This document shows positions 17,950-33,789 of a DNA stretch of 64,000 bases, in pieces (position 1 is the first letter of the stretch; each line of letters starts with the position of its first letter). This DNA is from Gekko japonicus (taxonomy: Eukaryota). The DNA lies in NCBI RefSeq assembly GCF_001447785.1, contig NW_015171648.1, forward strand, positions 1 to 64,000, given 5' to 3'. Both the position numbers and the translations under genes were made by a program. The notes beneath the pieces were generated by a model. It made no database searches. It was not told the origin of the DNA and saw nothing but the letters and a program-made list of their open reading frames with translations.

Positions 17950-18745
17950 AATTCTACTTGTTCTACTGATTTTACTTCTATAGCATAAATGAAACTGTCT
18001 CAAAGCCATTCAGACGGTTGCAATGATTGAGGTAAAGTGGAAATACTGTGTACATCTATTGAGATATTGCTCTTGAGTGGAAGTATCCATTAACTCTTGA
18101 GGCTGAAAAACGCCCCTGTCAGTTACATTTTCTGCTGATTAAACCTTTCATCTGAACTGGCCCTACTGCTTGCTCTTCCCTTACATTTTGTGTGCATAAA
18201 AGGTAGGCAGCCATTTCTGAAGACTGTCAGAAATTATTGCAGGTTGTTAATTTTTAGTTATCAGATTTGGTCTGTTAAAGATATTAAGGTGTACAGGGAT
18301 TAGTCAAATTTGGATTAATGGATTTATGAATGCATATCTGTGGCACATAGATGAATGAGATGAAAACATAGCAGAAAACTGAAATAGACAAATGTAAAAT
18401 AGATGTTACACATTCCAGTCCTATGTGTCCCAGCACTGATCCTTCTATATTCCTTTCTTAAAAAGAGGACGTAGCCATTCCCAATCCTATTCCCTGTCTG
18501 AAGTTTCTTGTCCCAGTATAAATAATATACTTAGGTTTTTAGGGTTAAGATTCTGTGTCTCTACATCTTTATATATCCATACAAGCACAACAGATCATGG
18601 TTTGGATCCAGGTTTTTTATATATACCATTTCTGTTTCTTACCTGTAAGGTACAGGTGTAAGCATTACGCAGAAAGACCACTGTAAACTATTATTTCAGG
18701 AAAATGTTTTGTGCAGATCAATGAAAACAGAATAATATGTGCAAC

Positions 18746-18778
18746 TGCTGTATTTTACTTCAAGCACAAGGTGGTGCT
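18746..18778 (+). promoter_or_regulatory. CSE/CTCF-like element of C1 with upstream module
   Basis: Core GCACAAGGTGGTGCT at 18764 with TGCTG starting 18 bp upstream; core 251 bp from ATG. Confidence 0.75.
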
Positions 18779-19014
18779 GTTGGCCAACAAAGCAGATATT
18801 GTTGAAGATGCTCCTTGCAAAAGCTGGGGCCATTAGAGAAAGCTGTATCAAGGAAACAGGCAGCAGCTCTGTATTTCAAGAAAACAGTCAGAAATATTAG
18901 GAGGAAAAGGCTTCTGAATCAATCTCCAACAATAAGAAGACCAAGGAAAGAAAGGGAACCAGGTGCTTTACAAAGAATCCCCTTGTGTTTTACTCCTGGG
19001 GAAAAGCTGCAAGA

Positions 19015-21444
19015 ATGCAAAGGAGCCACCTTAACAGGCAAGTCTGGTCTTTTTCTCTGTATTTATGCCTTGCTGTTGTGGTGTGTGAGACTTTCCACTA
19101 TTCAGTGCCTGAGGAAAAGAAAAGTGGGTCTCTGGTGGCAAATGTGCTAAAGGATTTGAAAGTAGATGTAAAGGAGCTGTCTGCTCGCAGGGCCCGGCTG
19201 GTTTCTGAAGGCAACAGGCAATATTTCCAGCTGGATCCACACTCTGGGAATGTGATATTGCAGGACAGAATAGATCGAGAGTCTCTCTGTGGTCAGAAGG
19301 ACACTTGTGTCTTATTCTCGGAGATTGTGCTGGAAAACCCACTGCAAGTGCACAGAATTGAGGTTGACATAGAGGATGTGAACGACAATTCCCCTGAATT
19401 CTCTAAGAAGGAATTCCTTTTTGAAATACCCGAACAGACTCCCCTGAATACTGGATTTCTACTGGAGAGTGCTACAGATGCAGACAGAGGGGGAAATGGT
19501 GTTCAGAACTATACCCTTAGTCCAAATGACCATTTTAGGTTGGGTGTTCAGAGTCACAGCGATGGCAGCAAAAGTGCAGAATTAGTACTGGAGAAACAAT
19601 TAGACCGTGAAGAGACTGCACGGCTTTTCTTGATTCTGTCAGCTATTGATGGAGGGACCCCAAAGAGAACAGGCACAGCAAAAATTGTAATTGATGTTCT
19701 GGACAACAATGATAATGTCCCTCAGTTCCATCAATCTCTGTACAAAGTGAAGGTACTGGAAAATGCCCCCCCAAACACACTTGTAGCTAAAGTGGAAGCA
19801 ACAGACAGGGATCTTGGTTCCAATGCCGACATCACTTATTCCTTCAGCCAGGTAACAGAAAATATCCTTAAATCTTTCAAGTTAAACAAAAATACCGGGG
19901 AACTTGCCGTTGCAGGGAAAATTGATTATGAAGAGGAGAGAAATTATGCAATAAACATCAAAGCCACTGATGGAGGGGGACTCTCTGCTTACTGCAAAGT
20001 CATTGTGGAGATTGAGGACATGAATGACAATGTGCCAGAGGTGACGCTCACATCCCTCATCAGCCCCTTACCAGAAGATTCTCCCACAGATACAGTGGTG
20101 GCCCTCTTCCGTGTCACAGACCGAGACTCTGGGGACAATGGCAGAACTGCCTGCACCACTGAGGCAAGCTTGCCTTTCATGGTGAAAGCAAATGCAAATA
20201 ATTACTATCAACTGGTCACTCAGCAGACCCTAGACAGAGAAAAAGCTTCAGAGTACAACGTCACCATCACAGCCACAGACCAGGGCTCTCCTAGGCTCAC
20301 TTCAAGAAAAACGATCAATGTCCAAATCTCAGACATCAACGACAACTCCCCAGTATTTGAAAAGTTATCATATGAAATGCAGTTATGGGAAAATAATATC
20401 CCAGGTCTGCTGATAGGTTTGGTCCAAGCCAAGGACCCGGACACAGCAAAGAATGCCAAAATGACGTATTCTCTTTTACCAGGAAAGGTCAGCGATCAAC
20501 CTGTATCCTCTTACGTTTCCATCAACACTGAAACTGGGAATCTGTATGCCATCCGATCTCTGGACTATGAGCAGGTGAAAGATTTCCAAGTGACTGTGAG
20601 GGCTGTGGACAGCGGTTCTCCTCCCCTGAGCTCTGAAGCTATGGTCCGAGTTTATGTCATGGATGAAAATGACAATGCCCCATTCATCCTCTACCCTCTT
20701 CAGAATGGCACTTCCCCATCCAATGACCTGGTTCCCAGGGGGGCGGAGGCTGGCTACCTGGTCACCAAGGTGGTGGCAGTGGACAGAGATTCCGGTCAGA
20801 ACTCTTGGCTTTCCTATGAGCTCCTGAAGGCCACAGAACCGGGTCTGTTCAGTGTGGGGGCCCAGAATGGAGAAGTGAAAACCATGAGACCCATTAACAA
20901 ACGAGACACCTTCAAACAGAAACTTATTATTGGAGTCAGTGACAATGGACATCCTCCCCAGTCCACCTCTGCAACACTAAGCATTCTGCTAGTGGACGGT
21001 TTTTCTGACCCTTATATGAAAATGGTGGATATCCCAAAGGAGGAAGTGGTGGAGGAGGAAGACCGTACCCTGACGATGTATCTGGTCATATGCTTGGCTG
21101 TCATCTCCTTCATTTTTCTGGTTTCTGTGTTGGTGTTTGTTGCCGTCAAAATTCAGAAAAGGAGAAAGTTCGTAGAGAGCTCTGCCCTGAATTTCCCAGT
21201 GGGACCAAATTTTCCTGAGAACTGTGGAGATGCTGATGCTGGATCCCTTTCCCGGGCTTACAACTATGAGGTGTGCTTAGCTGGTGGGTCCCTGAACAGC
21301 GAATTCAGGTTTCTCAGGCCTTTCTTTCCTGTGTTTTCTGTGGATCCTGCTCAATCCCAGGGAGCTCAAAGGATTTCACCAGGTTCCCAAGAAGTTCCCA
21401 GCCATGCAGCAGAAGGTCAGGTGAGAATAATTAATTTAATATAG
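19015..21444 (+). CDS. PCDHB: Protocadherin beta-like large exon, subfamily C copy 1 (C1)
   Basis: First ATG (MQRSHLNRQVW) of the 819-aa ORF; 6 EC, TM, beta tail; donor CAG|GTGAGA after 21420. Confidence 0.95.
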   Translation: MQRSHLNRQVWSFSLYLCLAVVVCETFHYSVPEEKKSGSLVANVLKDLKVDVKELSARRARLVSEGNRQYFQLDPHSGNVILQDRIDRESLCGQKDTCVLFSEIVLENPLQVHRIEVDIEDVNDNSPEFSKKEFLFEIPEQTPLNTGFLLESATDADRGGNGVQNYTLSPNDHFRLGVQSHSDGSKSAELVLEKQLDREETARLFLILSAIDGGTPKRTGTAKIVIDVLDNNDNVPQFHQSLYKVKVLENAPPNTLVAKVEATDRDLGSNADITYSFSQVTENILKSFKLNKNTGELAVAGKIDYEEERNYAINIKATDGGGLSAYCKVIVEIEDMNDNVPEVTLTSLISPLPEDSPTDTVVALFRVTDRDSGDNGRTACTTEASLPFMVKANANNYYQLVTQQTLDREKASEYNVTITATDQGSPRLTSRKTINVQISDINDNSPVFEKLSYEMQLWENNIPGLLIGLVQAKDPDTAKNAKMTYSLLPGKVSDQPVSSYVSINTETGNLYAIRSLDYEQVKDFQVTVRAVDSGSPPLSSEAMVRVYVMDENDNAPFILYPLQNGTSPSNDLVPRGAEAGYLVTKVVAVDRDSGQNSWLSYELLKATEPGLFSVGAQNGEVKTMRPINKRDTFKQKLIIGVSDNGHPPQSTSATLSILLVDGFSDPYMKMVDIPKEEVVEEEDRTLTMYLVICLAVISFIFLVSVLVFVAVKIQKRRKFVESSALNFPVGPNFPENCGDADAGSLSRAYNYEVCLAGGSLNSEFRFLRPFFPVFSVDPAQSQGAQRISPGSQEVPSHAAEGQVRIINLI

Positions 21445-21456
21445 AGATATAGAATG

Positions 21457-21784
21457 NNNNNNNNNNNNNNNNNNNNNNNNNNNNNNNNNNNNNNNNNNNN
21501 NNNNNNNNNNNNNNNNNNNNNNNNNNNNNNNNNNNNNNNNNNNNNNNNNNNNNNNNNNNNNNNNNNNNNNNNNNNNNNNNNNNNNNNNNNNNNNNNNNNN
21601 NNNNNNNNNNNNNNNNNNNNNNNNNNNNNNNNNNNNNNNNNNNNNNNNNNNNNNNNNNNNNNNNNNNNNNNNNNNNNNNNNNNNNNNNNNNNNNNNNNNN
21701 NNNNNNNNNNNNNNNNNNNNNNNNNNNNNNNNNNNNNNNNNNNNNNNNNNNNNNNNNNNNNNNNNNNNNNNNNNNNNNNNNNNN
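21457..21784. other. Assembly gap (also 49160-49713 and 54810-54980)
   Basis: Runs of N. Confidence 1.
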
Positions 21785-23400
21785 CTAAATCCTTCTGTCT
21801 GTTTTTCGCAGTAAAATTGTCACCATCCTATGTTTAGGAAATCAAGTGATCCCAGGCCCCTGCCACACGGCAGGGGAAAAGCCTCTTAAGGCGCGGCTTT
21901 TAAAAGCCACGCCAACGTTGAGGCGCCACGACGGGATCCCACGGATCCCCTGGCCGCGGCGCCTTTTCTCCCCGGTGCGATCAAACGCCGGGGAGAAAAC
22001 ACGGCCCGAACGGGAGCGGGCCGAACTGCGCATGTCCGGGCATGCGCAGTTCAGATCTGGGCCGGGGTTGAGCCGGCGCAAGGAAGCGCCGGCGATCAAA
22101 CGACCCGGTTGCCGCGCTGCTTCCCTTTAAACCACCTAGATAGGTGGTTCCGTTTGCGGCGGCGTTTCCTGGGAATGGGACAGTTCGGCCACGGAAGCAA
22201 GACGCTTCCCAGATGTTGTGGTGTGATCGCGCCGAACTGTCCCGCTCCCGGACCAAATCGCCACGTGTGAATGGGACCCCAGTCTTATTATATTCAGATG
22301 ATACGGTTTTGTTGTCTTGTTCCCACATTGGGTTCCTGAGGTTATTAAATAGGTTGGCCAGTTACTGCCACTCTGAAGGTTTAGAAATTAACTGCAGTAA
22401 GGTGCAAAGTATTACTATTTTATAAGAGAAGGAACCCTCCTGCATCCTGGTTGTCTATTGATGGTGTTCAAATTCAACAAATGAAAAAGTTTATGTATCT
22501 TGGTATACTTTTTTCTCACAATCTGAATTGGTCATTTCATCAAAAGGCTTTGCTAAAGAATATCAACAGTATGTAAAAAAAATTCAGGTATTGTGGGGGA
22601 CGTTATGTTCCTGGGGCGATTCACGTTTTTAATATGAAAAATTATTCTTATTTTGCTTTTTGGGGTGGCTATTTGGATTCAATTGGATTCAATTTTGATC
22701 TTCCTTCAATTCATTTTCTTTGTAAATTGATTAATGTATCTAAATGTGTAGCTGGAGTGTTGCTACATGCCGAATTGGGTCAATTATCCTTGGAGGCTAG
22801 AGCTTGGCAATTGGCTTTCTGTTTCTATTTTAAAGTTGTTGTTTTTAAATATTCTGGATATTTAGCTCTGATAAAAAAGCAAATTCTTTCAAATCCTCCT
22901 GGCTTAAGATTTTTACTCAAAACTTCCTCTCATTGGTTTAATTTCTGACATGATTCAGGAATGTGGTTCTGTAGCTGAAAATTCCTTTATTAGGAAACAT
23001 ATCCAAGAGATGGATTATTTGAGTACATGTTTTCGTGCCTGCAGGGTTTGTTCTTCCTTATTTTTTGGAATACCCTCCACCTAGGTCACTGCCTTCTTAT
23101 ACCTTCCATTTGTCCATCCCAAATTTTTAAAAACTTTTTTATTGACACGGCTAAATGCACAGCCCACCCCTGTTATGAGCGGTAGATTAAAGAGGACACC
23201 TTTTTCAGAGCAGTTATGTGACTGTTCTTTAGGGAAGATTGGTACCTTGGTTCATATTTTATTGGAATGTCCCCTGTATGTGATTTCTAGGAATCAATAT
23301 ATAATGTACTATTTGGACAATATTTCTTTTTTACTCACTATAAGAGAACGTCATTCCTTTTATCTGATAGATCTCCTACTATTCTCCTAGTTGGCACTAA
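21785..23400 (+). mobile_element. Degenerate RTE-X-like LINE (RT and C-terminus)
   Basis: LLYSDDTVLL..LEINCSK; AELGQLSLEARAW; LCDC..TLVHILLECPLY. Confidence 0.7.
21855..22278. mobile_element. CpG-rich PIF/Harbinger-like MITE inserted in a LINE RT
   Basis: Imperfect TIRs GGCCCCTGCCACACG / CGTGTGAATGGGACC; 3-bp TSD CCA; removing it restores CLGNQVIPVLLYSDDT. Confidence 0.75.
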
Positions 23401-23665
23401 TTTTTTTTGTTTGGATTTAAAACCTTGAAGACGATGTGTATCAGAGGAGGTATATGACTGCTCAAGCTAGTTGATCAAAGGAGCTTTAATCAAATGAAAG
23501 GAATCAGTCCCTCAGTCCATCAGAGTCAATGGCTCCCCAGTGTCTCATATCACTTCCTACCTGGTCCTTTTAACTGGAGATGCCAGGATTAAACCTAGGA
23601 CCTTCTGCAGGACAAGGAGATGCACTGAGCCAGTGCTGTTCCCCACAGAAGAGAAGACGCTATAG

Positions 23666-24050
23666 CAGCCCCATGGACAGAAAATTTTGGTGGGGCAGTG
23701 GCCGGGGTGCTGGGGCAGGGGAGCGGGGGTAGCATGCATTCTCTCGCTCTTTCCTACCCCAGCCCCACCCCACCCCGCCGCACAGTGGCAGGAAGGTTGG
23801 GGAAGGAAAGGGAAGTGGCCTTGCCACTTCTAGTCAGTTTTATTCCCCTCCCATCAGCTGTTAAAACAGCTAATCGACAGGGAGTGAAACTGACCAGAAG
23901 TGGCAGGACGGCTTCGCTTTCCTTCTCTATCCTCCCAGCCACTGCAGGGGTAAGGCGCACCGGGGGTGGGGGTCTGGGGGGGATCGGCATCGTCCCAGGG
24001 TGGGCAGGGCTCATCCGTGGTGGGTCTTCACCCCCATGGCTACGGGCCTG
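23666..24050. mobile_element. Palindromic GC-rich MITE
   Basis: Internal inverted repeat centred near 23862; imperfect 8-bp TSD CGCTATAG/TGCGATAG; empty site in the paralogous flank near 51600. Confidence 0.7.
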
Positions 24051-24847
24051 TGCGATAGAGAGATGAAATGTCTTTCCTTTTAAGAGGAACCCTGCTGGAT
24101 CAGACCAGCGGTGCATCTAGTCCAGCATCCTGTCTCACACAGTGGCCATCCAGTTCCTCTGGAGGGCCAACAACAGGGCATAGAGGCTGAGGCCTTCCCC
24201 TGATGTTGCCTCCTGGCTCTGGAATTCAGAGGCTGACTGCCTCTGAACATGGGGCTGGTAGCCACTGATAGACCTGTCCTCCGTAAATTTGTCTACTCTC
24301 CTTTTAAAGCTCTCTGTGCCTGTGGCCCTCAGTTCTCCTTCCTTCGTGGCACTCTCTGCCCTTTCTTCTCTCATCTTTCCTGCCGGAGTCTATTTCTTCA
24401 GCCAAGACAGTAGAAGCCACTGCACGCACTACATTTTTATGTCTACCTGTAATAATTGTATGTGTCTTCCTAGAAATACAAATTGAATTTGGCATTCACA
24501 CATTTATAAATGTGAGCATTGGATGGCATGCTCTTTGGAGAGTGTAACAGGCTGCAGGTCCTGCTGAGCATATAGCTGGTGCCAAATTTGCGACTGCATC
24601 TGCCTAAAATGCAAAAGGACCACGAGATCTTTACACAGCTTGTTGCTCAATATAATAAACAAACTTGTTTGTTGTGAAGTGATATGAGATTTTTGCATTT
24701 TATGTATGTGGGTTAGTTTATTTAGGTTAATTTGCAAGTGGATGCTGAAAGACTGATTAAATTTAGACATGGGTCCCCCTTTAAAAAATTTGAGAACCAC
24801 TGGTTTAATGGACAATACACAATCCTTCTGGTTTACTTCTGCTTGGG

Positions 24848-24862
24848 CCACAAGATGGCAGT
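24848..24862 (+). promoter_or_regulatory. CSE/CTCF-like element of A2
   Basis: CCACAAGATGGCAGT (close to CTCF core consensus), 272 bp upstream of ATG. Confidence 0.8.
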
Positions 24863-25119
24863 ATTGGCAAACAGATGAGTTGCAACTTGCATTTCAGACA
24901 AAAAAAAAGTCACAGTTTATCAGCCCAAGGAGAAACCTATGAAGAGAGAGACAGAATCTGAAGTCCGATGGAAGATACACTGAAAGATTCAAGGAATGAA
25001 AGTGATGAACATAGCATATGGAGATCAGTTTTTCCAACAACATTAATTGCCTCTGGATAATACCCAACTGCTTCATGTTTTCAAAACCATAAATATCTGA
25101 CCTGGGAGAGTCTGGCACC

Positions 25120-27546
25120 ATGGACCATAGCTTCAGGATCATGAAAGGTCTGTATCTTTTGTTCTTACTCTCTCTGTCTGGAGTTGTGTGTGTCTCAATT
25201 CGCTATTCTTTGCCGGAAGAGAAGAAAAGTGGGTCTCTGGTGGCTAATGTGCTGAAGGATTTGAAACTGGGACCAGGGGAGCTCTCTGCTCGCAGAGCCC
25301 AGCTGGTTTCCAAAAGCAATAAGCAATATTTCCAGCTAGATACCCATTCTGGGAACCTGTTTGTAAATGACAAAATAGACAGAGAAGCTTTGTGTGGCCA
25401 GACTGACCCCTGCTTACTTCTTTCTAAAATTGCACTGGACAAACCTTTAGAGATCGTCAGTATAGAACTGAAGATAGAAGATGTGAACGATAACTCCCCT
25501 AAGTTTTCTAAAACTGAATTTAATCTAGAAATCCCTGAGAATGTTCCCACAAATACCCGATTCCCCCTGGAATCAGCCCAAGATGCAGACTTGGGTGAAA
25601 ACAGCATCCAGAACTACACCCTCAGTCCCAATGGGAATTTCAGGCTGGATGTACAAAGTGATGAATTTGGGAGCAAATATGTGGACCTTGTTCTGGAGAA
25701 GTCACTAGACAGGGAGGAGAAGGCTCAATTTGGGCTGACTCTCACAGCTGTTGATGGAGGGGTGCCCCAGAGAACAGGCAAAGTTCAAATAACTATTAAG
25801 GTTTTGGACAACAATGACAACTTCCCTCAGTTTATACAATCCGAATATAAAGTGAAGCTGAAGGAAAACTGCCCACGTGGTACTGTGGTGTCTAAAGTGG
25901 AAGCCAAAGATTTGGATTTTGGTTCAAATGCACAGATCTCCTATTCATTCCATCGGGTGCCTGAGAAAATAAGCAGCTTGTTCCACTTACATGAGAGCAC
26001 TGGAGAAATCACTGTTTTGGGTCCAATTGACTATGAAAAAGAAACCAGCTATAATATGAACATCAAAGCCACAGATGGGGGAGGTCTTTCAGGCCACTGC
26101 AAAATCTTGGTGGAAATTGAGGATGAGAATGACAATGCCCCAGAGATATCAGTCATATCTATCTCCAGCACTGTGCAAGAAGATTCACACCTGGACACAG
26201 TGGTGGCGCTTTTCAGTGTCACCGACCAAGACTCTGGGGAGAACAGCAGAACTTCATGTTCCATAGACACAAACCTTCCCTTCGTGTTAAAGGCCACTGG
26301 GAGTAACAACTATCAGCTTGTGATCCAGAGTCCCTTGGACAGAGAGAAAGTCCCTGAGTACAACATCACCATCACAGCTACTGATCGGGGCTCTCCCAGG
26401 CTCACTACAAAAAGAACAATTACGGTTTTGATCTCAGACATCAATGACAACTCTCCAGTGTTTGAGAAGTCCAAGTATGAAATGCAGGTGTGGGAAAACA
26501 ACATTCCCGGCCTGCTGATGGGTTCGGTCCGTGCTGTCGATCTGGACGTGGAGCAGAATGCCAAGGTGACCTATTCCCTTGTGACTGGAAATGCCAGTGG
26601 TGCTCCTGCAGCCTCTTACGTTTCCATCAACTCTGAGACGGGGAATCTGTACGTCCTGCGATCTCTGGATTATGAGCAGATCAAGGAGTTCCAAGTGAGA
26701 GTGAGGGCTTCAGATGGGGCTTCTCCTCCACTGAGCTCGGAAGCTGTTGTTCGAGTTGTGATCCTGGATGAAAACGATAATGCCCCCTTCTTCCTCTACC
26801 CTCTTCAGAACAGCACCTCCCCCTTCAACGAGCTGGTTCCCAAGACAGTGGAGGCCGGTTACCTGGTCGCCAAGGTGGTGGCTGTGGATGGGGATTCGGG
26901 CCAGAACTCTTGGCTTTCCTATGAACTGCTGAAGGCCACGGACCCTGGCCTTTTCAGCATCGGAGCCCAGAATGGAGAAGTGAAAACCAGGAGACCACTG
27001 ACAGAGAGAGATACAAACAAGCAGAGACTGATTATCCTGGTGAGAGACAACGGCCACCCTCCTCAGTCCAGCACTGCAACCCTGAATATCCTTCCGGTGG
27101 ATGGCTTTTCAGATCCTTATCTGAATATTGCAAGCGTCAGTCACGAAGCCAGTGAAGAAGATGGCTCCTTGACCATGTACCTGGTGATCTGCTTGGCTGC
27201 GGTGTCCTTTGTGTTCCTGGTTTGCATCATTGTGTTTGTTGTCATCAGAATGTACAAGAAAGAGTCTAGTTTTATCACCGCCCTTCCTCAGTTCCCACCT
27301 GCCTTACCTGAGATCCCTGAAACCGGTGTCGATTCTCAGAGTGGATCACTTTCCCGGACCTACCAGTATGATGTTTGCCTAACCGGTGGATCACTAAGCA
27401 GCGATTTCAGATTCCTTAGGCCTCTCATTCCTGTTTTTTCCATGGGGGATCCAAGCTTTTCTGAGAATCACAGATTTTCTTCTGTCTCTCAGGAGACTCC
27501 TGAACAGGTAGAGGGAGGAAAACCAAGGGAACACGTAAGTGATTAG
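25120..27546 (+). CDS. PCDHB: Protocadherin beta-like large exon A2 (mosaic of A1-like and A3-like tracts)
   Basis: 808-aa ORF, start in GGCACCATGG; donor CAC|GTAAGT after 27534. Confidence 0.95.
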   Translation: MDHSFRIMKGLYLLFLLSLSGVVCVSIRYSLPEEKKSGSLVANVLKDLKLGPGELSARRAQLVSKSNKQYFQLDTHSGNLFVNDKIDREALCGQTDPCLLLSKIALDKPLEIVSIELKIEDVNDNSPKFSKTEFNLEIPENVPTNTRFPLESAQDADLGENSIQNYTLSPNGNFRLDVQSDEFGSKYVDLVLEKSLDREEKAQFGLTLTAVDGGVPQRTGKVQITIKVLDNNDNFPQFIQSEYKVKLKENCPRGTVVSKVEAKDLDFGSNAQISYSFHRVPEKISSLFHLHESTGEITVLGPIDYEKETSYNMNIKATDGGGLSGHCKILVEIEDENDNAPEISVISISSTVQEDSHLDTVVALFSVTDQDSGENSRTSCSIDTNLPFVLKATGSNNYQLVIQSPLDREKVPEYNITITATDRGSPRLTTKRTITVLISDINDNSPVFEKSKYEMQVWENNIPGLLMGSVRAVDLDVEQNAKVTYSLVTGNASGAPAASYVSINSETGNLYVLRSLDYEQIKEFQVRVRASDGASPPLSSEAVVRVVILDENDNAPFFLYPLQNSTSPFNELVPKTVEAGYLVAKVVAVDGDSGQNSWLSYELLKATDPGLFSIGAQNGEVKTRRPLTERDTNKQRLIILVRDNGHPPQSSTATLNILPVDGFSDPYLNIASVSHEASEEDGSLTMYLVICLAAVSFVFLVCIIVFVVIRMYKKESSFITALPQFPPALPEIPETGVDSQSGSLSRTYQYDVCLTGGSLSSDFRFLRPLIPVFSMGDPSFSENHRFSSVSQETPEQVEGGKPREHVSD

Positions 27547-28258
27547 CTCTTTTTCTAAAATACCTGATATTCTATTGTAATTTCATCGGTGATGTAATAT
27601 AATGCTTTTTGCTATTGTTGTTTAATTATTTCCCACCCTTTCTTTTCCCCTGTGTATCGCTTCTTGAATGTTTTCTTAATAGCTTCAGTACTTGAAATCA
27701 GGATGTGAAATTCTGCCCCACTCCTCCGTTTACATTTTCACGTTCTTTGTTTACCCAGTTCCTTTCCCTGTTGGGGGAACACACCTGACACTCATGTAAG
27801 GTTTTTCTTTGAGATCCCCACCACACTTTACATGGCTCATTCTTCTTCCTTCTAATATGTCTCCAGTCTCGTTGTCTACTGTCTTCCTTCACATGAACCA
27901 AAAGAAGAGCGAAGCTGCTCAAGTAGTTTTAAAGATAAGGATAAGAAAGTGATTACAACAGAACTGGAGGAAGGGCTGAGAGCTACTTTTAATGGCTGGA
28001 AGAAAGACCGGTCACTCCTGACTGACCTTCTGCTGACCCCAGTGTAGAACACATTTTGGCAATCTAGTCATGAGGTTACCAAGCAATGCATGTCCAGACC
28101 TTCACTGATCCATTCACAAGCCCTCCAGGGCCAAAGGTAGGGTGTCCCTCAGCTCATGTTTCTAAGGACAACCAGAAAGAGGTTTGGAGGTGGGGATGTG
28201 GTGGGTGTGATGTTCTGTGCTCCACTATGTCAATTCTGGGGAAAACCATAGAGTTTCC

Positions 28259-29290
28259 TTTTTTCTTCTTCTTCAAAAGTTTATTTATCATATTTTCAAT
28301 CTAATTACAAACTTTTCTCTTGATTACATATATATTTAGAGTCTTAAATCAAATTACATGTCATATATCACACTATTATCTCTTTTCGTATTACATTTTT
28401 TCATGATTAATCCAGTAGTAAACCCTTGACCATCTTCTATTCTGTATTTTTTCGTCTTTCTTTTGAAGTATTAAACTTAAACTGTCCATTTGTGCTAGTT
28501 CTAATAATTTTACTACTAGGTCCTCTTTTGAGGGTATTTTATCCATTTTCCAATTTTTAGCCACTAGAATTCTTGCAGCTGTTATAATATATACTAATAA
28601 GTACACATCTTGCTTATCAAAACCTTTTGGGATTATATTCAACAAGCATGTTTCTGGAGTTAACATAACATTTATATTCAATATTTCAGAAATAACTTTA
28701 TAAACCATTTTCCAGTATGTTTGAATTTTATTACAATTCCACCACATGTGATAAAAGGTCCCCACATTTGACTTACATCTCCAACATTTGTTGGATGATT
28801 GTGGATAACACTTCGCTATTTTATCTGGGGACCAATACCACCTGTGGAACATTTTATAAATATTTTCCTTATAAGATATGGCTCTCATAAATTTTGCTGA
28901 CTTCCATATGGCATCCCATTGTTCTATATCAATCTCTTTTTGCATATCCTGCATCCAGGAAATCATAACCGATTTAATATTTTCATCCAGTTCGTAATCT
29001 TCTAGTAAAAATCTGTACAGCTTTTGAATTAATTTATCACTGGATGACAGCCATATCTTGTCAAGTTGGGAGTTCCTAGCTTCAAATCCTTTAAGTTTAT
29101 CTTTTCCGTATCTATCTCTTAATAAGTTATTTTCCCACCATGACAATTTAATTTGATACTCTTGTAGCAATTTTTCTTCTGTTTTTAAATTATTATTCCC
29201 TTCTAGCAACAAATTGTAGTTTGCTTTTAATCTTGTTGTCAAAAGTGAGGGTTTTACGAAAGCTTCCAAAGGGGACACCCATCTTGGCGT
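28259..29290 (-). mobile_element. 5'-truncated L1-clade LINE (ORF2 C-terminus)
   Basis: 295-aa open frame with CWRC..GTFYHMWWNC knuckle; AATAAA and A-rich tail; 20-bp TSD GGGAAAACCATAGAGTTTCC; empty site at ~31400. Confidence 0.92.
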
Positions 29291-29630
29291 GGGAAAACCA
29301 TAGAGTTTCCAATGATTCCTAGAGCTACCCTATGTCACTTCTGGGGAAAACCCAGAAGTGACATAACAGCACACAGGATGCCAATATTTTCAGCAGTAAC
29401 AGCTGAAGGCGGGAAAGCTTCCTGTCATAACTGGAAGTCAGGCAGCCTTACACTGATCCTATCTGTGGAATTCTCAACAAACTAAGGACAAGATACAACA
29501 GAAGTGTCTAATTTTATCTGCAAATTCTGTGTAAATATGACACAGCAATCACACTCACACAAATGTATACACAAAGGCTGTGACTGATTCTCTGTTCACC
29601 TGGAACAGGTCTACCCAGTGGTACTGTTCA

Positions 29631-30623
29631 CCCTAGTACCCTAGGCTGATTGTCTTGGGTGATTTCAACGTCCATGCTGAGGACACGGCCTCCAGTCGGT
29701 CTGCGGACCTAGTGTCATTCATGACGGCACTGGGACTCTCTCAACTTGTTACGGCCCCCACGCATCGGGCCGGTCACACGCTCGATTTGATCTTCGCGGC
29801 TGGGGTGAGGGTGGACTGGATTACTGCGGAGGCAGTACCATGGTTGGACCACCAGGCCCTGAAGGCCCGTCTGAATGTTCCACCCCAACCCTGTTTAGGT
29901 GGCGAGCGGATTTTTGCTCGCCCGTGTGGCCAAATGGACCCTATGCAGCTTCAGATGGCCTTGTGGGATCCTAAGCCCCCTGGCGGCTCATTAGATGAGC
30001 TGGTGGAGGATTGGCATGACCGGCTCTCCACGGCCATCGACAAGATCGCTCCCAGGCGTCCTCTCCGAACTCATATTAGGCGGGCGCCCTGGTAAACACA
30101 GGAGTTACGTCAGCTGAAGCAAGAACTGAGACGACTAGAGAGACGATGGTGTTGCGCTCACGACGAGGCTTCAAGAACATCCTATAGGACGTTTATGAGA
30201 TCCTATGAGATGGCAGTCAAGGCCACAAAGAGAGATTTCTATGCGACCATGATTGCATCTGCTAGCTCACGCCTGGCACAATTATTTAGTACGATTCGAT
30301 CTTTTGACAGCTCTGCCACAGGGCAGGCAAAATGCTAGGGAATTGGATATCGGCTGTGAGGCATTTGCGAGCTATTTTGCAGAGACCTCCCCGCCACAAT
30401 TGATACAGTGAGCGAACTTGAGGCCCCTTGCACGTCTTTGGTGCCGGGTTTAGTGAGTTTTGGCCCACTCAGCCTGGAAGAAGTTGACAGATTGCTTGTA
30501 TCGGTGCGCCCAACCACATGCGATCTTGATCCGTGCCCCTCTTGGCTCATTAAATTGGGTCATGAGGGGTTTCGAGATGCCCTGCGGGAGAAGGTCAACA
30601 AGTCTCTCTTGGAGGGATGGTTA
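29631..30623 (+). mobile_element. Internal L2-clade LINE fragment (endonuclease to pre-RT)
   Basis: GDFNVH..LGLSQLVTAPTHRAGHTLDLIF; PTTCDLDPCPSWLIK; CpG-rich. Confidence 0.85.
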
Positions 30624-30707
30624 GAGAATCACAGATTTTCTTCTGTCTCTCAGGAGACTCCTGAACAGGTAGAGGGAGGAAAACCAAGGGAACACGTAAG
30701 TGATTAG
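30624..30707 (+). pseudogene. Duplicated 3' tip of A2 (ENHRFSSVSQETPEQVEGGKPREH) with orphan splice donor
   Basis: Identical to 27463-27546, including CAC|GTAAGT (donor after 30695). Confidence 0.9.
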
Positions 30708-31449
30708 CTCTTTTTCTAAAATACCTCTCATTCTATTGTAATTTCATCAGTGATGTAATATAATGCTTTTTGCTATTGTTGTTTAATTATTTCCCACCCT
30801 TTCTTTTCCCCTGTGTATCGCTTCTTGAATGTTTTCTTAATAGCTTCAGTACTTGAAATCAGCATGTGAAATTCTGCCCCACTCCTCCATTTACATTTTC
30901 ACGTTCTTTTCCCCCCAGTTCCTTTCCCTGTTGGGGGAACACACCTGATACTCATGTAAGGTTTTTCTCTGAGAACCCCACCACACTTTACATGGCTCAT
31001 TCTTCTTCCTTCTAATATGTCTCCAGTCTCGTTGTCTACTGTCTTCCTTCACATGAACCAAAAGAAGAGCGAAGCTGCTCAAGTAGTTTTAAAGATAAGG
31101 ATAAAAAAGTGATTAGAACAGAACTGGAGGAAGGGCTGAGAGCTACTTTTAATGGCTGGAAGAAAGACCGGTCACTCCTGACTGACCTTCTGCTGACCCC
31201 AGTGTAGAACACATTCTGGCAATTTAGTCATGAGGTTACCAAGCGATGCGTGTCCAGAACTTCACTGATCCATTCACCAGCCCTCCAGGGCCAAGGGTAG
31301 GGTGTCCCTCAGCTCATGGCTCTAGGGACAACCAGAAAGAGGTTTGGAGGTGGGGATGGGGAGGGTGTGATGTTGTGTGCTCCACTATGTCAATTCTGGG
31401 GGAAACCATAGAGTTTCCAATGATTCCTAGAGCTACCCTATGTCACTTC

Positions 31450-31701
31450 CAGTAGCTTTCAGCTCATTAAGCCTTCTACTTTTTTGACTGCCAACAGTAA
31501 CTGTTTAGGAATTCCACTGTTATTTTGGGGCTGTTGGCAGCCACTGATATTCTATTGTTTTCTTATTGTTGTAAATATTTGGGGAAATTTTGTATACTTT
31601 ATAGTAACTATCTAGTATAAAGCAATTGTATCTAGCATACTACTCATGGTTCAGAGTGTATTATTGGTTCTATATTGGCCCCAGTTTTGTCTTGTTTCCT
31701 C
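31450..31701. other. Unclassified 252-bp insertion flanked by CACTTC direct repeats
   Basis: Absent from the duplicate copy (~29336) and from the related repeat near 7425. Confidence 0.65.
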
Positions 31702-32384
31702 CACTTCTGGGGAAAACCCAGAAGTGACATAACAGCACACAGGATGCCAATATTTTCAGCAGTAACAGCTGAAGGCGGGAAAGCTTCCTGTCATAACAGG
31801 AAGTCAGGCAGCCTTACACTGATCCTATCTGTGGATTTCTCAACAAACTAAGGACAAGATACAACAGAAGTGTCTACTTTTATCTGCAAATTTCTGGGTA
31901 AATATGACACAGCAATCACACTAACACAAATGTATACACAAAGGCTGTGACTGATTCTCTGTTCACCTGGAACAGGTCTACCCAATGGTATTGTTCAGGC
32001 ACAATATTGGGAAAGAATAACAGAGCTTCACTGCAATCATGTACATTAGAGGTGCTGCTAACTTCATAACAAATATGTCTGGCTGTTGAACATACCATTT
32101 TCATCAGCCACAATGAATTGTGAACCAAGCCTTGTATCTCCTCGCCTTGCTGCCGTTCAAATTCAGCAGCTGCTGGACAGCTTTGGAGCTATGCAGTAGC
32201 CATGGTATTGGTGTTTCATTTTGTTCTGCCTTGAAGCCACTTATGCATCTACACATTAGGTGAAATTGATCCTTTCCCAAAGGTCATGGATGGTTGGGTC
32301 ATGTAATTCCAGAGTGTAGTGGCAGCGACAATGACTCCCAAAAGTCAGTGCAAAAAAATAATAATGCACAGATGAGATAATATT

Positions 32385-32800
32385 TATTTATTTATTTAGA
32401 TTTTTAGGCCATCCTTCCTTGCAAGCAAGGCTGAGAGTGGCTTACAACAGAAGAGGACAAACAAGGAGTAATTAAAAGTTAAAAACCAAGAATAAATATA
32501 TAAAACATATAACACCAATAATTCATCAGCATAATTCAGTCGATCCAAGGTGGTGGGGAAAAAATTTCTCATGCCTCCAGGCTGCGGAGAATGAAGGTTT
32601 ATGGGAGTGCCAGACTACATGCTATACTGTCGCTGTCCTCAACCGAATGCCTGCTGGAACATCTCTGCCTTACATGCCCTGCAGAAAGGTAACAAATTCT
32701 GCAGGGCAGAGATGTCCTCAGGCAGAGAGTTTCACCAGGTGGGGGCCAGGACCGAAAAAGCTCTGGCCCTGGTTGAGGACAGCCGGATCTCTCTCTCCAA
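32385..32800 (-). mobile_element. L2-like LINE 3' end; similar tails ~32945-33050 and 55560-55750
   Basis: (TTTA)n tail followed by GGCT(C/G)AG..GGCTTAC; GGCAGAGAGTTTCACCAGGTGGGGGCC. Confidence 0.6.
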
Positions 32801-33342
32801 TAACATGGACTTAAATGAACATAAAACACTAAGACCAAAAACAAACAAACACCCCAAGCCCACACACAGTGAAAGTCTTCATTAAGGGATCTAATATTAC
32901 ATCATGGAATTGCTTTTAACATTCAGCTGTTAACCCACCGGCGTTATTTCCATTTATGCTTTCAATTTATATTCCGCCCTCCCCGCATGGGCAGGCTCAG
33001 GGCGGCTTACAACAAGTTAAAAAAACCCAGAATAAATACAGTAAAACATGGATACATCGACAAAGCAAAAATCATATTTTCAGTCGCTTTATTTACCTCT
33101 GATTGTAATTGCTTGATTTAAATTCGTTCTAACATCATCTACTACATATGTTATTTTGCTTTTTTTTTTTTGTGCAAAGCCTCCTTTATGCTAGACAATT
33201 CAGGACTACGAGATGAATATAAATTGCTATAAAAATCCCTAAATACTTGAGAAGTCTCTTGATCAGTTATCGTTAATGTCTGTGGTCTCTAAGAAAAAAA
33301 CAGGCTGGATCATCCCTTCCTTACTCTTGTCTTATCAGTCAC

Positions 33343-33789
33343 AGGCCCCGGTCACACGGGAGATTTCGGGCCGGAAGAGGGACGGATCGGGGGCACAGCA
33401 AATGGGCGCAATCAAACCGCAACTTCTGGGAAGCAGCGCACACCCGTCCCCGATCCGGCCCTTCAGGCCGAAAATGCGCAGCAAAAAAGAACCTGCTAAA
33501 GAGCAGGACTTACCTAAAACACTGTAGCAAGCGCGACTGTTGGATCGCTGGCATGGCCGTCTGCAGGAGCAATCGAGGCTCCCAGCTGAACTGCACATGT
33601 GCACACATCCGCAGCCGGCGGCCTCACGCTCCCTTCCGTGGCTTTCTCCCCGGCATCTGATTGTGCCGGGGAGCAACTGCGCGGCGGCTCATGGGATCTG
33701 TCTGATCCCCCTGCCGCGTGTTTCTTTTGGTGCAGCTTTCAAAAGCCGCACTTTGCCCGCATCAATTTCTCCCCGTGTGGCAGGGGCCT
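33343..33789. mobile_element. CpG-rich MITE related to the 21855 element
   Basis: 17-bp TIRs AGGCCCCGGTCACACGG / CCGTGTGGCAGGGGCCT. Confidence 0.75.

What the first reader, a model, noticed from the sequence alone, without database searches (positions are those of the whole stretch)
25120..27546. A2 is a natural chimera with matched EC1+EC4 like A1 and EC2/EC3 like A3
Seen: A2 shares its promoter with A3. Distal EC1 and early EC2 are A1-like (GQTDPCLLLSKIAL.KPLE; ~25375-25615, with small exceptions). Mid-EC2 and EC3 are A3-like ([30 protein letters not shown]; [10 protein letters not shown]; [11 protein letters not shown]; ~25633-26154). From the start of EC4 (EISV|ISISSTVQEDS) through EC4 and the 3' flank it is A1-like again. 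Established: clustered Pcdh trans dimers are antiparallel, with EC1:EC4 and EC2:EC3 interfaces setting homophilic specificity. Inference: recombination or conversion shuffled interface pairs as units, e.g. a crossover near EC3/EC4 plus compensatory EC1 conversion, creating a new self-recognition identity. Which gene is the recipient cannot be fixed from three sequences.
Basis: partly seen in the sequence, partly recalled or inferred. Interest (0 to 1): 0.76.

Follow-up and report, generated by a model that had tools for sequence, protein, structure and literature searches.

The report
Mosaic protocadherin exon at duplication junction
One gecko neuronal self-recognition gene (a clustered protocadherin) is a real and ancient patchwork of its two neighbouring sister genes, best explained by an old tandem duplication followed by local sequence exchange rather than by a special mechanism that moves binding surfaces as matched pairs.

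Summary
The window (Gekko japonicus by protein match) holds eight clustered-protocadherin variable exons in a repeated A-B-B' unit. Of 242 informative sites, 0 of 20,000 shuffles reach the observed clustering.

The tracts are:
- 25375-25609, A1-like
- 25617-25720, A3-like
- 25724-26152, weakly A3-like
- 26157-26473, A1-like
- EC5 to the exon end, alike in all three

It is not an assembly chimera. G. kuhli, Heteronotia and Euleptes proteins carry the same arrangement. Per-domain trees stay incongruent with 47 sequences (AU p=3.7e-5 and 3.9e-106).

A2's 5' flank matches A3's and its 3' flank matches A1's. Both differ by K2P 0.20-0.21, within the 0.15-0.28 range of the other colinear blocks of the two repeat units. 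A2 is therefore the junction gene of an old unequal-crossover duplication, later patched by gene conversion.

The EC1+EC4 match needs no compensatory event, because one central EC2b-EC3 tract differs. EC1-EC4 coupling disappears outside this one clade. The B duplicate pairs do not follow it either. EC3 is not simply A3's. Binding specificity is untested.

The parts
24056..25093 (+). A2 5' flank and promoter, homologous to the A3 5' flank (51606-52834). MAFFT suggests the homology reaches back to about 23464. A1 shares only the promoter motif.
   Evidence: Self-BLAST; 100-nt window identities; K2P 0.21 over 669 nt and 0.20 over 355 nt.
24849..24874 (+). Conserved promoter element 271 nt upstream of the ATG. 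It looks like the protocadherin conserved sequence element / a CTCF-type site; that label is recalled, not tested.
   Evidence: Alignment of the 8 upstream regions. The pattern derived from it hits 8 times on the + strand, once 250-284 nt upstream of each of the 8 exons.
25120..27534 (+). A2 variable exon: signal peptide, EC1-EC6, TM and a short cytoplasmic part. Open frame. A GTAAGT donor follows at 27535.
   Evidence: ORF. Pfam Cadherin_2, Cadherin (5 stretches) and Cadherin_C_2. PDB best match Pcdh gamma-B4 EC1-6, E 4e-173. Donor. Gecko gene models splice here to a shared tail of about 39 aa.
25120..25363 (+). Signal peptide plus proximal EC1, about equally like A1 and A3 (homogenised).
   Evidence: 7 of 15 informative sites A1-like. 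dS 0.16-0.21 for all three pairs.
25375..25609 (+). A1-like tract: distal EC1 plus the first third of EC2 (aa about 86-164). It ends at the family-wide QNYTLSPN motif.
   Evidence: 40 of 44 sites A1-like. dS A1-A2 0.137 against A2-A3 0.86.
25617..25720 (+). A3-like tract in mid EC2; a recent A2-A3 exchange.
   Evidence: 29 of 29 sites A3-like. dS A2-A3 0.034 against A1-A2 0.84 for aa 165-210.
25724..26152 (+). End of EC2 plus EC3: an old, separate lineage that is only weakly A3-leaning. It ends just after the DENDNAPE linker.
   Evidence: 40 of 57 sites A3-like. dS 0.37 (A3) and 0.47 (A1). Nearest proteins are the G. kuhli A2 orthologue (8 differences in 134 aa) and Heteronotia P0017 (14), against A3 (17).
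26157..26473 (+). A1-like tract: EC4.
   Evidence: 67 of 73 sites A1-like. dS A1-A2 0.118 against A2-A3 1.01.
26474..27534 (+). EC5, EC6, TM and cytoplasmic part, homogenised among A1, A2 and A3.
   Evidence: 94-98% identity for all pairs. dS 0.12-0.18.
27535..28102 (+). A2 3' flank, homologous to the A1 3' flank (5782-6311) and not to A3's.
   Evidence: Self-BLAST. K2P 0.20 over 512 nt. 54-57% identity to A3 in 100-nt windows.
3367..5781 (+). A1 variable exon, the parent-type for distal EC1, EC4 and the 3' flank.
52861..55234 (+). A3 variable exon, the parent-type for the promoter and mid EC2. It holds the N gap 54810-54980. The end is inferred from the offset to A2.
5782..25119 (+). Repeat unit U1 (A1 3' flank, B1 exon 10713-13157, B'1 exon 19015-21444, A2 5' flank). 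It is colinear with U2.
   Evidence: Colinear BLAST blocks 5707>27463, 10238>37609, 13885>42538, 15646>45113, 17098>45850, 18315>47273 and 24056>51606. K2P 0.15-0.28.
27535..52860 (+). Repeat unit U2 (A2 3' flank, B2 exon about 38097-40580, B'2 exon about 48017-50650 with an N gap, A3 5' flank).

Best explanation
A2 is a genuine, intact and old variable exon of a gecko beta/gamma-B-like clustered protocadherin array.

Origin. It arose as the junction gene of a tandem duplication of a roughly 22-25 kb A-B-B' unit. The duplication came from unequal crossing-over (non-allelic homologous recombination) between two older paralogs, the A3 lineage (giving the promoter and 5' end) and the A1 lineage (giving the 3' end and 3' flank). 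That single event explains why the two flanks have different relatives of the same age.

Later history. The exon has since kept exchanging sequence with both neighbours by gene conversion. It exchanges with A1 everywhere except a central tract (late EC2 plus EC3), and with A3 in the 5' end and mid EC2. Exchange is blocked where the partners are already about 75-80% identical. The tract edges sit at family-wide conserved motifs.

The domain pattern. The protein's trans dimer is antiparallel. A single central tract therefore keeps EC2b-EC3 together and leaves EC1 and EC4 together. The 'matched pairs' pattern follows from geometry and needs no compensatory event.

Shown and inferred. Shown: the mosaic, its age, the equal-age flanks, the incongruent trees, and within-species homogenisation. 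Inferred: the crossover mechanism, the position of the crossover, the direction of each conversion, and any change in binding specificity.
For: Mosaic:
- 242 informative sites; 0 of 20,000 shuffles reach the clustering.

Not an artefact:
- G. kuhli P0121 (aa 824-1631) is 94.6% identical to A2 over 808 aa. It is fused in its gene model to the orthologue of the upstream B'1 exon (89.8% to B'1 against 82.9% to B'2).
- Heteronotia P0008 and Euleptes P0009 also combine A1-type aa 91-164 and 345-447 with A3-type aa 165-210.
- Unitigs of three other runs and RNA reads lie on A2 at 97% or more, with no joints.

One duplication:
- K2P is 0.21 and 0.20 for A2up-A3up and 0.20 for A2down-A1down.
- Five other colinear noncoding U1/U2 blocks give 0.15-0.28 (blocks).
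- A1's upstream shares only the promoter motif.

Continuing exchange:
- dS for A1-A2 is 0.12-0.19 in every region except aa 165-344, where it is 0.47-0.84.
- dS for A2-A3 is 0.034 in aa 165-210.
- G. kuhli A1 and A2 are identical in aa 91-164 (0 of 74 differ).
- Heteronotia A1+A2 pair by species on S1+S4 (99/87), and Heteronotia A2+A3 pair on S2+S3 (100/96).

Stable edges:
- A1-A2 differences are confined to aa about 172-329 in three species.

Incongruence:
- S1+S4 give a 10-member clade (100/98).
- Holding it together on S2+S3 costs 136.6 lnL (AU p=3.7e-5).
- Holding A2-types with the A3 group on S1+S4 costs 157.8 lnL (p=3.9e-106).

Mosaicism is the rule here: B1 is nearest to B3, then B2, then B'1 along its length.
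Against: - No read or contig was shown to span a break point in G. japonicus itself. The listed Logan pieces are 356 nt or shorter, and none has 31 nt on both sides of a break.
Whether the flank relations hold in other geckos is therefore unknown.
- The A1-like patch in distal EC1 or the central tract still needs a second event beyond the crossover.
- EC3 (dS 0.37 to A3) is older than the duplication (K about 0.2) and has no donor among the sequences seen.
- dS of A1-A2 in EC1b, EC4 and EC5 (about 0.13) is below the flank K (0.20). The 'same age' reading therefore needs later homogenisation.
- The six non-A1-type members of the clade are not one lineage in EC2-EC3 either (AU p=0.0034). The history is more tangled than two events.
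- All 16 clade-diagnostic columns lie in EC1b and EC4, and one of them is the gamma-B 369 position. This is what selection on the EC1:EC4 interface would also give.
Confidence: 0.68

Rival explanations
1. Selection for self-compatible binding surfaces moved the interface pairs as units. A crossover near EC3/EC4 first made a mismatched EC1(A3)/EC4(A1) hybrid. A compensatory conversion of distal EC1 from A1 then restored the EC1:EC4 match, creating a new homophilic identity that selection has kept.
For: - Separate trees of aa 91-164 and aa 345-447 recover exactly the same 8 rows (SH-aLRT 94 and 96). Concatenated with the two G. kuhli pieces they give 10 rows at 100/98.
- All 16 columns diagnostic for that clade lie in aa 94-118 and 349-397, and none in EC2-EC3.
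- aa 397 aligns with gamma-B residue 369 (read off the gamma-B4 alignment). It is N in 10 of 10 clade members and Y in 32 of 32 other A-family rows. Residues 86 and 369 are named as a correlated EC1:EC4 specificity pair in passages of PMC5106212.
- The tract edges are the same in three species.
- All four combinations of EC1b/EC4 type and EC2-3 type exist in G. japonicus: A1, A2, A3, and P0021/P0033/P0034.
Against: - The coupling rests on one lineage. The EC1-EC4 Spearman correlation is 0.42 with the clade and -0.12 without it, while neighbours correlate (EC1-EC2 0.30, EC2-EC3 0.64, EC3-EC4 0.25).
- In the other two duplicate pairs of the same duplication the pairs are split. For B1-B2, dS is 0.17 in EC3 but 0.41-0.42 in EC2. 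For B'1-B'2, dS is 0.89 in EC1b but 0.29 in EC4.
- Single-domain exchanges occur: distal EC1 alone in G. kuhli, and mid EC2 alone in G. japonicus.
- One central tract gives the same pattern with one event fewer in need of selection.
- Lab chimeras with EC1 and EC4 from different paralogs still aggregate, according to a passage of PMC5001838.
- No binding data exist.
Confidence: 0.2
2. A1, not A2, is the derived chimera in the ectodomain. The ancestral gene of the A1/A2 clade already combined the clade's EC1b/EC4 with an A2/A3-type EC2-EC3. After the duplication, A1 took a different EC2b-EC3 cassette from another paralog group in the gekkonid ancestor. This is compatible with the junction-gene origin of A2's flanks if the crossover lay in the 5' homogenised part.
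For: - A1-type EC2-3 rows (A1, G. kuhli A1, Heteronotia P0015, Paroedura P0024) are all Gekkonidae. They sit inside a 20-row clade (99/89) of other paralogs.
- The clade's members from Sphaerodactylidae (P0009, P0018) and Eublepharidae (P0029) have the other EC2 type: 3-8 differences from A2/A3 against 12-17 from A1 in aa 165-210.
- A search with A1's variable region listed no further A1-type gecko protein.
- dS of A1-A2 is uniform (0.12-0.19) on both sides of the tract.
Against: - The six non-A1-type members do not form one lineage in EC2-EC3 (AU p=0.0034). Their EC2-3 has been replaced repeatedly, and 'ancestral state' is weakly defined.
- Only annotated proteins clustered at 90% and listed in the best 120 were seen. 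An A1-type gene in other families could be missed.
- No donor close to A1's tract was found; the best are 88%.
Confidence: 0.35
3. A2 is an assembly chimera of A1 and A3 reads in a short-read, gap-containing scaffold.
For: The scaffold is short (70,773 bp) and has three N gaps in the window. The paralogs are 94-98% identical over long stretches. No piece was shown to bridge a break point.
Against: The same arrangement is present in independent assemblies of G. kuhli (94.6% over the full length, differences evenly spread), Heteronotia and Euleptes. The frame is intact with dN/dS 0.17-0.29 in every segment. Unitigs from three other runs match A2-specific stretches with 0-3 differences, and no joints or loose ends fall at the break points.
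Confidence: 0.02

Closest known systems
Regional gene conversion in clustered protocadherin arrays that spares EC2-EC3. Sources: passages of PMC1852091 (fugu), PMC4978886 (Xenopus and mouse) and PMC2764143 (anole), which cite Noonan et al. 2004 and Wu 2005. Those two papers were not held.
   Same: The A1-A2 pair shows exactly this pattern. Everything is homogenised (dS 0.12-0.19) except late EC2 plus EC3 (dS 0.47-0.84). EC5, EC6, TM and the cytoplasmic part are homogenised family-wide.
   Different: - The A2-A3 pair shows the reverse. EC2 is exchanged (dS 0.034 in G. japonicus; the Heteronotia A2/A3 pair is 100/96 on EC2-3), while distal EC1 and EC4 stay apart (dS 0.86-1.0).
- The anole paper reports little conversion in its beta subcluster, whereas this gecko family is strongly patchy.
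Laboratory domain-shuffled protocadherin chimeras used in cell-aggregation assays. Rubinstein et al. 2015 was seen only as described in passages of PMC5106212 and bioRxiv 10.1101/493106.
   Same: A1, A2 and A3 form a natural series. A1 and A2 share EC1b/EC4 and differ in EC2b-EC3. A2 and A3 share mid EC2 and differ in EC1b/EC4.
   Different: The series is natural, old and conserved across gecko genera. The swaps do not follow domain borders: early EC2 goes with EC1, and EC3 is a third lineage. No binding data exist.
Hybrid genes at the junction of unequal-crossover duplications (anti-Lepore-type globin and opsin hybrids; recalled, no call).
   Same: The 5' flank and 5' end come from one parent and the 3' end and 3' flank from the other. 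The duplicated interval between them is colinear and of equal age.
   Different: Here the junction gene is one of many alternative first exons with its own promoter. Later conversion has blurred the original crossover point.
Anolis carolinensis protocadherin beta subcluster (PMC2764143; the anole proteins named 'Protocadherin beta-1' are 70-73% identical).
   Same: The same subfamily by best matches. Single large variable exons, each with its own promoter.
   Different: NCBI models in Heteronotia, Paroedura and Sphaerodactylus splice these exons to a shared tail of about 39 aa. A GTAAGT donor follows the A1 and A2 exons. The anole and mammalian beta genes are described as lacking constant exons.

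Membership tests
Clustered protocadherin variable exon (beta / gamma-B-like) | Six extracellular cadherin repeats, one TM and a short cytoplasmic part encoded by one exon of about 2.4 kb | tested here: met
   808-aa open frame. Pfam Cadherin_2 (2.5e-37), Cadherin (5 stretches, 1.6e-87) and Cadherin_C_2 (9.3e-22). Aligned to Pcdh gamma-B4 EC1-6 over residues 26-665, E 4e-173.
Clustered protocadherin variable exon (beta / gamma-B-like) | Tandem array of paralogous exons, each with its own promoter carrying a conserved element | tested here: met
   8 exons on one strand in 64 kb. A conserved motif lies 250-284 nt upstream of each ATG, 8 of 8. Its function as a promoter or CTCF site was not tested.
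Clustered protocadherin variable exon (beta / gamma-B-like) | Expression | tested here: inconclusive
   RNA-seq raw reads (X21, about 3% of the run read) lie on the exon at 97% or more, depth about 1-7. Paralog cross-laying cannot be excluded in the homogenised parts.
Recombinant (unequal crossover plus gene conversion) paralog | Informative sites clustered in tracts beyond chance | tested here: met
   66 runs against a mean of 116 in shuffles; 0 of 20,000 shuffles reach the observed value.
Recombinant (unequal crossover plus gene conversion) paralog | Per-segment trees incongruent when other paralogs are included | tested here: met
   AU p=3.7e-5 and 3.9e-106 on 47 rows.
Recombinant (unequal crossover plus gene conversion) paralog | Flanks related to different parents, and a duplicated interval that is colinear and of equal age | tested here: met
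   K2P 0.20-0.21 for both flanks and 0.15-0.28 for five other noncoding U1/U2 blocks.
Recombinant (unequal crossover plus gene conversion) paralog | Single molecules spanning the break points in this species | tested here: inconclusive
   Listed Logan pieces are 356 nt or shorter, and none has 31 nt on both sides of a break. There are no contradicting joints. Support comes from other species' assemblies instead.
Interface-matched domain-swap chimera (EC1+EC4 from one parent, EC2+EC3 from another) | EC1 and EC4 share one parent | tested here: met
   Distal EC1 is 40 of 44 sites A1-like and EC4 is 67 of 73. The same clade appears in separate trees. Proximal EC1 carries no signal.
Interface-matched domain-swap chimera (EC1+EC4 from one parent, EC2+EC3 from another) | EC2 and EC3 together come from the other parent | tested here: not met
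   Early EC2 (to aa 164) is A1-like. Mid EC2 is a recent A3 exchange (dS 0.034). EC3 has dS 0.37 to A3 and 0.47 to A1, and groups with G. kuhli A2 and Heteronotia P0017.
Interface-matched domain-swap chimera (EC1+EC4 from one parent, EC2+EC3 from another) | Pairs move together as a rule in the family | tested here: not met
   The EC1-EC4 correlation is -0.12 without the one clade. The B1-B2 and B'1-B'2 patches split the pairs.
Interface-matched domain-swap chimera (EC1+EC4 from one parent, EC2+EC3 from another) | Distinct homophilic specificity of A1, A2 and A3 | not testable with these tools
   This needs cell-aggregation or biophysical assays.

The most novel reading that the evidence does not exclude
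The gecko beta-like protocadherin family diversifies by cassette exchange in a two-key code: a distal-EC1/EC4 key and a late-EC2/EC3 key. The trans dimer is antiparallel, so swapping the central cassette between paralogs yields a protein whose two interfaces are each still self-matched. Recombination can therefore produce a working new self-recognition identity in one step. Selection has then held the same tract edges for the whole gekkonid radiation. On this reading the A1/A2/A3 triad, plus the fourth combination in other paralogs, is a natural 2x2 experiment. It could settle whether EC1:EC4 contributes specificity or only affinity.
Probability: 0.2. Interest if true: 0.65.

Novelty: new member of a known kind. 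Interest (0 to 1): 0.4.

Why it matters
Clustered protocadherins give neurons individual identities. How new, strictly homophilic isoforms arise after duplication is usually discussed in terms of point mutation plus escape of EC2-EC3 from conversion.

This locus is a clean, datable example of two things:
- Array growth by unequal crossover that leaves a hybrid junction gene.
- Duplicates then diverging by importing or keeping whole tracts rather than by point changes.

It also offers a ready-made natural series for the open dispute over whether EC1:EC4 encodes specificity. A1/A2 differ only in late EC2-EC3. A2/A3 share mid EC2 but differ in distal EC1 and EC4.

The processes themselves (tandem duplication, gene conversion, EC2-EC3 diversity) are already known. 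My searches found no paper on gecko protocadherin clusters. That covers only the open-access library.

Tried and rejected
- Assembly chimera: rejected on orthologues in three other gecko assemblies.
- 'A3 is the converted one because its distal EC1 and EC4 look B-like'. This was my early idea (note 1). It is rejected because A3's segments fall inside the large A-family clades, not with the B exons. The shared residues are the common state, and the A1/A2 clade is the derived one.
- Family-wide EC1-EC4 coupling: looked positive (0.42) but is carried entirely by one clade.
- Vertical descent of an A2-like arrangement in all six non-A1-type clade members: rejected by AU p=0.0034.
- Homology of the A1 promoter to anything else in the window: none apart from a repeated element of about 400 nt at 1725-2119 and 2414-2769 that is also at 50861-51267.
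- Nucleotide-level orthologues: not obtainable.
- Interface mapping: only positions named in passages of PMC5106212 could be placed, by counting along the gamma-B4 alignment. The letters at chain positions 41, 86, 338 and 340 agree with the residues the paper names. The alpha-7 and gamma-A numbers (36, 38, 79, 322, 324) were placed with the same offsets and may be off by an indel. Figure supplements and supplementary files with full interface lists were not seen.
- Variant letters in other runs: 21 of 30 equal the A1 and/or A3 state. This is either cross-laid paralog sequence or allelic conversion, and was not resolved.
- Earlier-findings look-ups: nothing relevant.

Rows dropped before counts:
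- P0013 and P0047, which are identical to A1 and A3.
- P0037, which lacks the N-terminus.
- The five B rows, only.
- Non-gecko hits, which were never put in the trees.

Full report
WHAT IS IN THE WINDOW

Eight long open frames lie on the + strand. All are clustered-protocadherin variable exons. A2 has Cadherin_2, five Cadherin stretches and Cadherin_C_2. It aligns to mouse Pcdh gamma-B4 EC1-6 at E 4e-173.

The exons fall into two kinds in a repeated order:
- A1 (3367-5781)
- B1 (10713-13157)
- B'1 (19015-21444)
- A2 (25120-27534)
- B2 (about 38097-40580)
- B'2 (about 48017-50650)
- A3 (52861 to about 55234)
- B3 (60252-62681)

Three N gaps (21457-21784, 49160-49713, 54810-54980) were left as they are.

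The exact A2 protein and its neighbours are Gekko japonicus 'protocadherin beta-16-like' entries on a 70,773-bp contig. Each exon has a conserved motif 250-284 nt upstream of its ATG, 8 of 8. A GTAAGT donor follows A1 and A2. In Heteronotia, Paroedura and Sphaerodactylus gene models the exon is spliced there to a shared tail of about 39 aa.

THE OBSERVATION

Over 25120-27066 there are 242 informative sites, 147 A1-like and 95 A3-like. They form 66 runs, against a mean of 116 and a minimum of 81 in 20,000 shuffles. The longest runs are 26 and 29, against shuffle maxima of 25 and 14. No shuffle reaches any of the three values.

The BIC-best segmentation has four breaks:
- 25124-25363: mixed (7 of 15 A1-like)
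- 25375-25609: A1-like (40 of 44)
- 25617-25720: A3-like (29 of 29)
- 25724-26152: A3-leaning (40 of 57)
- 26157-27039: A1-like (83 of 97)

A five-break model narrows the clearly A1-like part to 26157-26473 (67 of 73). Beyond that all three exons are alike.

Upstream, A2 aligns to A3 over at least 24056-25093 and not to A1. Downstream, 27535-28102 aligns to A1 and not to A3.

The two sharp breaks sit at motifs shared by all eight exons. One is the QNYTLSPN stretch of EC2 (aa 164-171). The other lies just after the DENDNAPE linker between EC3 and EC4.

HOW DEEP EACH TRACT IS

Synonymous divergence:

| Region (aa) | A1-A2 | A2-A3 |
|---|---|---|
| 1-90 | 0.19 | 0.21 |
| 91-164 | 0.137 | 0.86 |
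| 165-210 | 0.84 | 0.034 |
| 211-344 | 0.47 | 0.37 |
| 345-447 | 0.118 | 1.01 |
| 448-646 | 0.126 | 0.18 |

A1 and A2 are therefore about equally close everywhere except one central tract. A2 and A3 share a very recent exchange in mid EC2. EC3 of A2 is old relative to both. 'EC2/EC3 like A3' is thus only partly right. dN/dS is 0.17-0.29 in all segments for the A1-A2 and A2-A3 pairs (except 0.12-0.14 in aa 448-646), so the gene is under purifying selection.

NOT AN ASSEMBLY ARTEFACT, AND OLD

Reads from G. japonicus:
- Logan unitigs of three other runs of the same organism label and RNA-seq raw reads lie on A2 at 97% or more.
- There are no joints and no loose ends at the breaks.
- No listed piece has 31 nt on both sides of a break, so this does not prove continuity.

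Evidence from other species is stronger:
- G. kuhli P0121 is a fused model. Its second half is 94.6% identical to A2 over all 808 aa.
- Its first half is the orthologue of the upstream B'1 exon (89.8%, against 82.9% to B'2).
- P0122 holds the A1 orthologue. P0006 holds the A3 orthologue followed by a B3 piece.
- Heteronotia P0008 and Euleptes P0009 also have A1-type aa 91-164 and 345-447 together with A3-type aa 165-210.
- In G. japonicus, G. kuhli and Heteronotia the A1-A2 amino-acid differences are confined to the same stretch, aa about 172-329.

Euleptes is a sphaerodactylid, and Heteronotia and Paroedura are gekkonids. The arrangement therefore predates the split of those families. Absolute dates would be recall and are not given.

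TREES WITH OTHER PARALOGS

The set has 47 rows: the 8 window exons, 36 gecko proteins (P0006 among them, trimmed to its A-type exon part) and pieces of two other G. kuhli fused models (P0121, P0122).

On aa 91-164 plus 345-447:
- The tree gives a 10-member clade at 100/98. It holds A1, A2, their G. kuhli orthologues, Heteronotia P0015 and P0008, Euleptes P0009, Sphaerodactylus P0018, Paroedura P0024 and Eublepharis P0029.
- The two segments analysed separately each gave the same 8 rows.

On aa 165-344 the clade breaks up:
- A2 and G. kuhli A2 group with Heteronotia P0017 (94/92). This group sits next to A3, G. kuhli A3 and the pair P0008+P0016 (99/90).
- The A1-type rows sit in a 20-row clade of other paralogs (99/89).

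AU tests:
- Holding the 10 together on aa 165-344 costs 136.6 lnL (p=3.7e-5).
- Holding A2-types with the A3 group on the outer segments costs 157.8 lnL (p=3.9e-106).
- Holding even the six non-A1-type clade members together in EC2-EC3 is rejected (p=0.0034).

EC2-EC3 has therefore been exchanged more than once.

Signs of continuing within-species exchange:
- G. kuhli A1 and A2 are identical in aa 91-164 (0 of 74 differ).
- The Heteronotia A1/A2 pair groups by species on the outer segments (99/87).
- The Heteronotia A2/A3 pair groups on EC2-3 (100/96).

ORIGIN: THE JUNCTION GENE OF A TANDEM DUPLICATION

Self-comparison shows that the interval from A1's 3' flank to A2's 5' flank (U1) is colinear with the interval from A2's 3' flank to A3's 5' flank (U2), in seven blocks.

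Noncoding K2P distances:

| Pair | K2P |
|---|---|
| A2up-A3up | 0.21 and 0.20 |
| A2down-A1down | 0.20 |
| B1up-B2up | 0.15 |
| B1down-B2down | 0.28 |
| Intergenic blocks | 0.20 and 0.17 |
| B'1up-B'2up | 0.24 |

A1's own upstream shares only the promoter motif with A2 and A3. A3's 3' flank is unrelated to the other two.

This is the signature of unequal crossing-over between an A3-lineage exon and an A1-lineage exon. It makes one duplicated interval and a hybrid exon at the junction, with the A3 promoter and the A1 3' flank. Because the G. kuhli B' exon next to its A2 is closer to B'1 than to B'2, the duplication predates the two Gekko species.

The crossover point itself is not recoverable. 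Three cases are possible:
- In the 5' homogenised part: one further event is needed, replacement of the central tract in A1 or A2.
- At EC3/EC4: one further event is needed, conversion of distal EC1.
- In EC5 to the cytoplasmic part, the longest high-identity stretch: two further events are needed.

IS THE EC1+EC4 / EC2+EC3 PATTERN MORE THAN GEOMETRY?

For:
- The same clade appears in both outer segments.
- All 16 clade-diagnostic columns lie in aa 94-118 and 349-397.
- aa 397 aligns with gamma-B residue 369. It is N in 10 of 10 clade rows and Y in 32 of 32 other A-family rows. Residues 86 and 369 are named as correlated EC1:EC4 specificity residues in PMC5106212 (passages).

Against:
- Among within-species paralog pairs the EC1-EC4 distance correlation is 0.42 (117 pairs). 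It falls to -0.12 (77 pairs) without that one clade. Neighbouring domains then correlate as expected for random tracts (EC1-EC2 0.30, EC2-EC3 0.64, EC3-EC4 0.25).
- The two other duplicate pairs made by the same duplication have different patches. B1-B2 has EC3 at dS 0.17 but EC1b 0.64, EC2 0.41-0.42 and EC4 0.42. B'1-B'2 has EC1b and EC2a at 0.89-0.90, EC2b 0.22 and EC4 0.29.
- A nearest-paralog scan shows every exon is a patchwork. B1, for example, is B3-like, then B2-like, then B'1-like.
- Single-domain exchanges occur.

One central differing tract gives the observed pattern without a compensatory step. I therefore put selection-driven 'unit' shuffling at about 0.2.

WHICH GENE IS THE ODD ONE

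A1-type EC2-3 was seen only in Gekkonidae. The clade's members in Sphaerodactylidae and Eublepharidae have the A2/A3-like EC2 type. A1 may therefore be the gene that took a foreign central cassette, with A2 keeping the older ectodomain combination. This rests on annotated proteins only. It is weakened by the repeated EC2-3 exchange.

LITERATURE

- Passages of PMC1852091, PMC4978886 and PMC2764143 describe regional conversion that homogenises the C-terminal domains and spares EC2-EC3. They report low conversion in anole.
- Passages of PMC5106212 say specificity residues lie in both EC1:EC4 and EC2:EC3, and that domain-shuffled mutants depend on the identity of EC1 and EC4.
- Passages of PMC5001838 say EC1/EC4 gives affinity, and that chimeras with EC1 and EC4 from different paralogs still aggregate.
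- bioRxiv 10.1101/493106 (passages) models the published chimeras.
- Five searches found no description of gecko protocadherin clusters or of a natural junction hybrid in a protocadherin array. The library is open-access only. Noonan 2004 and Wu 2005 were not held. Supplements were closed.

VERDICT

The chimera is real, intact, conserved and old. The mechanism is best read as an unequal-crossover junction gene plus ongoing, homology-limited gene conversion. That makes it a new, well-resolved member of a known kind. The functional claim is untested, and the 'pairs as units' idea is not supported beyond this single lineage.

Noticed in passing
window 27463-29630 and 30624-31997: There is a young local duplication downstream of A2. 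27463-28258 matches 30624-31418 at 96% (K2P 0.041), and 29336-29630 matches 31702-31997 at 97%. The copy includes the last 72 nt of the A2 exon and its splice donor, so a stray exon-end fragment lies at about 30624-30701. Whether it is real or an assembly duplicate is unknown.
   Followed up: partly
window 3107, 10434, 18765, 24849, 37826, 47759, 52596, 59968 (+ strand): A conserved motif of about 26 nt lies 250-284 nt upstream of every one of the 8 start codons. It is found nowhere else on the + strand with the pattern used. It looks like the protocadherin promoter element / CTCF-type site; that label is recalled, not tested.
   Followed up: partly
window 27535 and 5782; proteins P0008, P0015, P0016, P0018, P0024: These 'beta-16-like' exons end at a GTAAGT donor. 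In three other geckos' gene models they are spliced to a shared C-terminal tail of about 39 aa. Beta protocadherins of anole and mammals are described as lacking constant exons (PMC2764143 passages). The constant exon is not in this window.
   Followed up: no
window 10713-13157 (B1), 38097-40580 (B2), 60252-62681 (B3), 19015-21444 (B'1): The B exons are mosaics too. B1 is nearest to B3 up to about aa 250 (including the promoter, K2P 0.106). It is nearest to B2 in aa about 225-500 (97% at aa 250-299), then to B'1 in EC5-EC6 (94-97%).
   Followed up: partly
window 1725-2119 (-), 2414-2769 (+), 50861-51267: A repeated element of about 400 nt with internal inverted parts is present twice, in opposite orientation, upstream of A1 and once upstream of A3 (86-90% identity). 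It is probably a transposable element and was not classified.
   Followed up: no
window 24909-27654 (30 places listed): In other runs of the same organism label, 21 of 30 differing letters equal the A1 and/or A3 letter at that position (for example 25605, 26017, 26022). Either paralog sequence was laid on A2, or conversion tracts are polymorphic among individuals.
   Followed up: partly
proteins P0121, P0122, P0006, P0003 (Gekko kuhli), P0127 (Sphaerodactylus): Several deposited gene models fuse two neighbouring variable exons into one protein of 950-1680 aa. They are useful here as synteny evidence but are annotation errors.
   Followed up: partly
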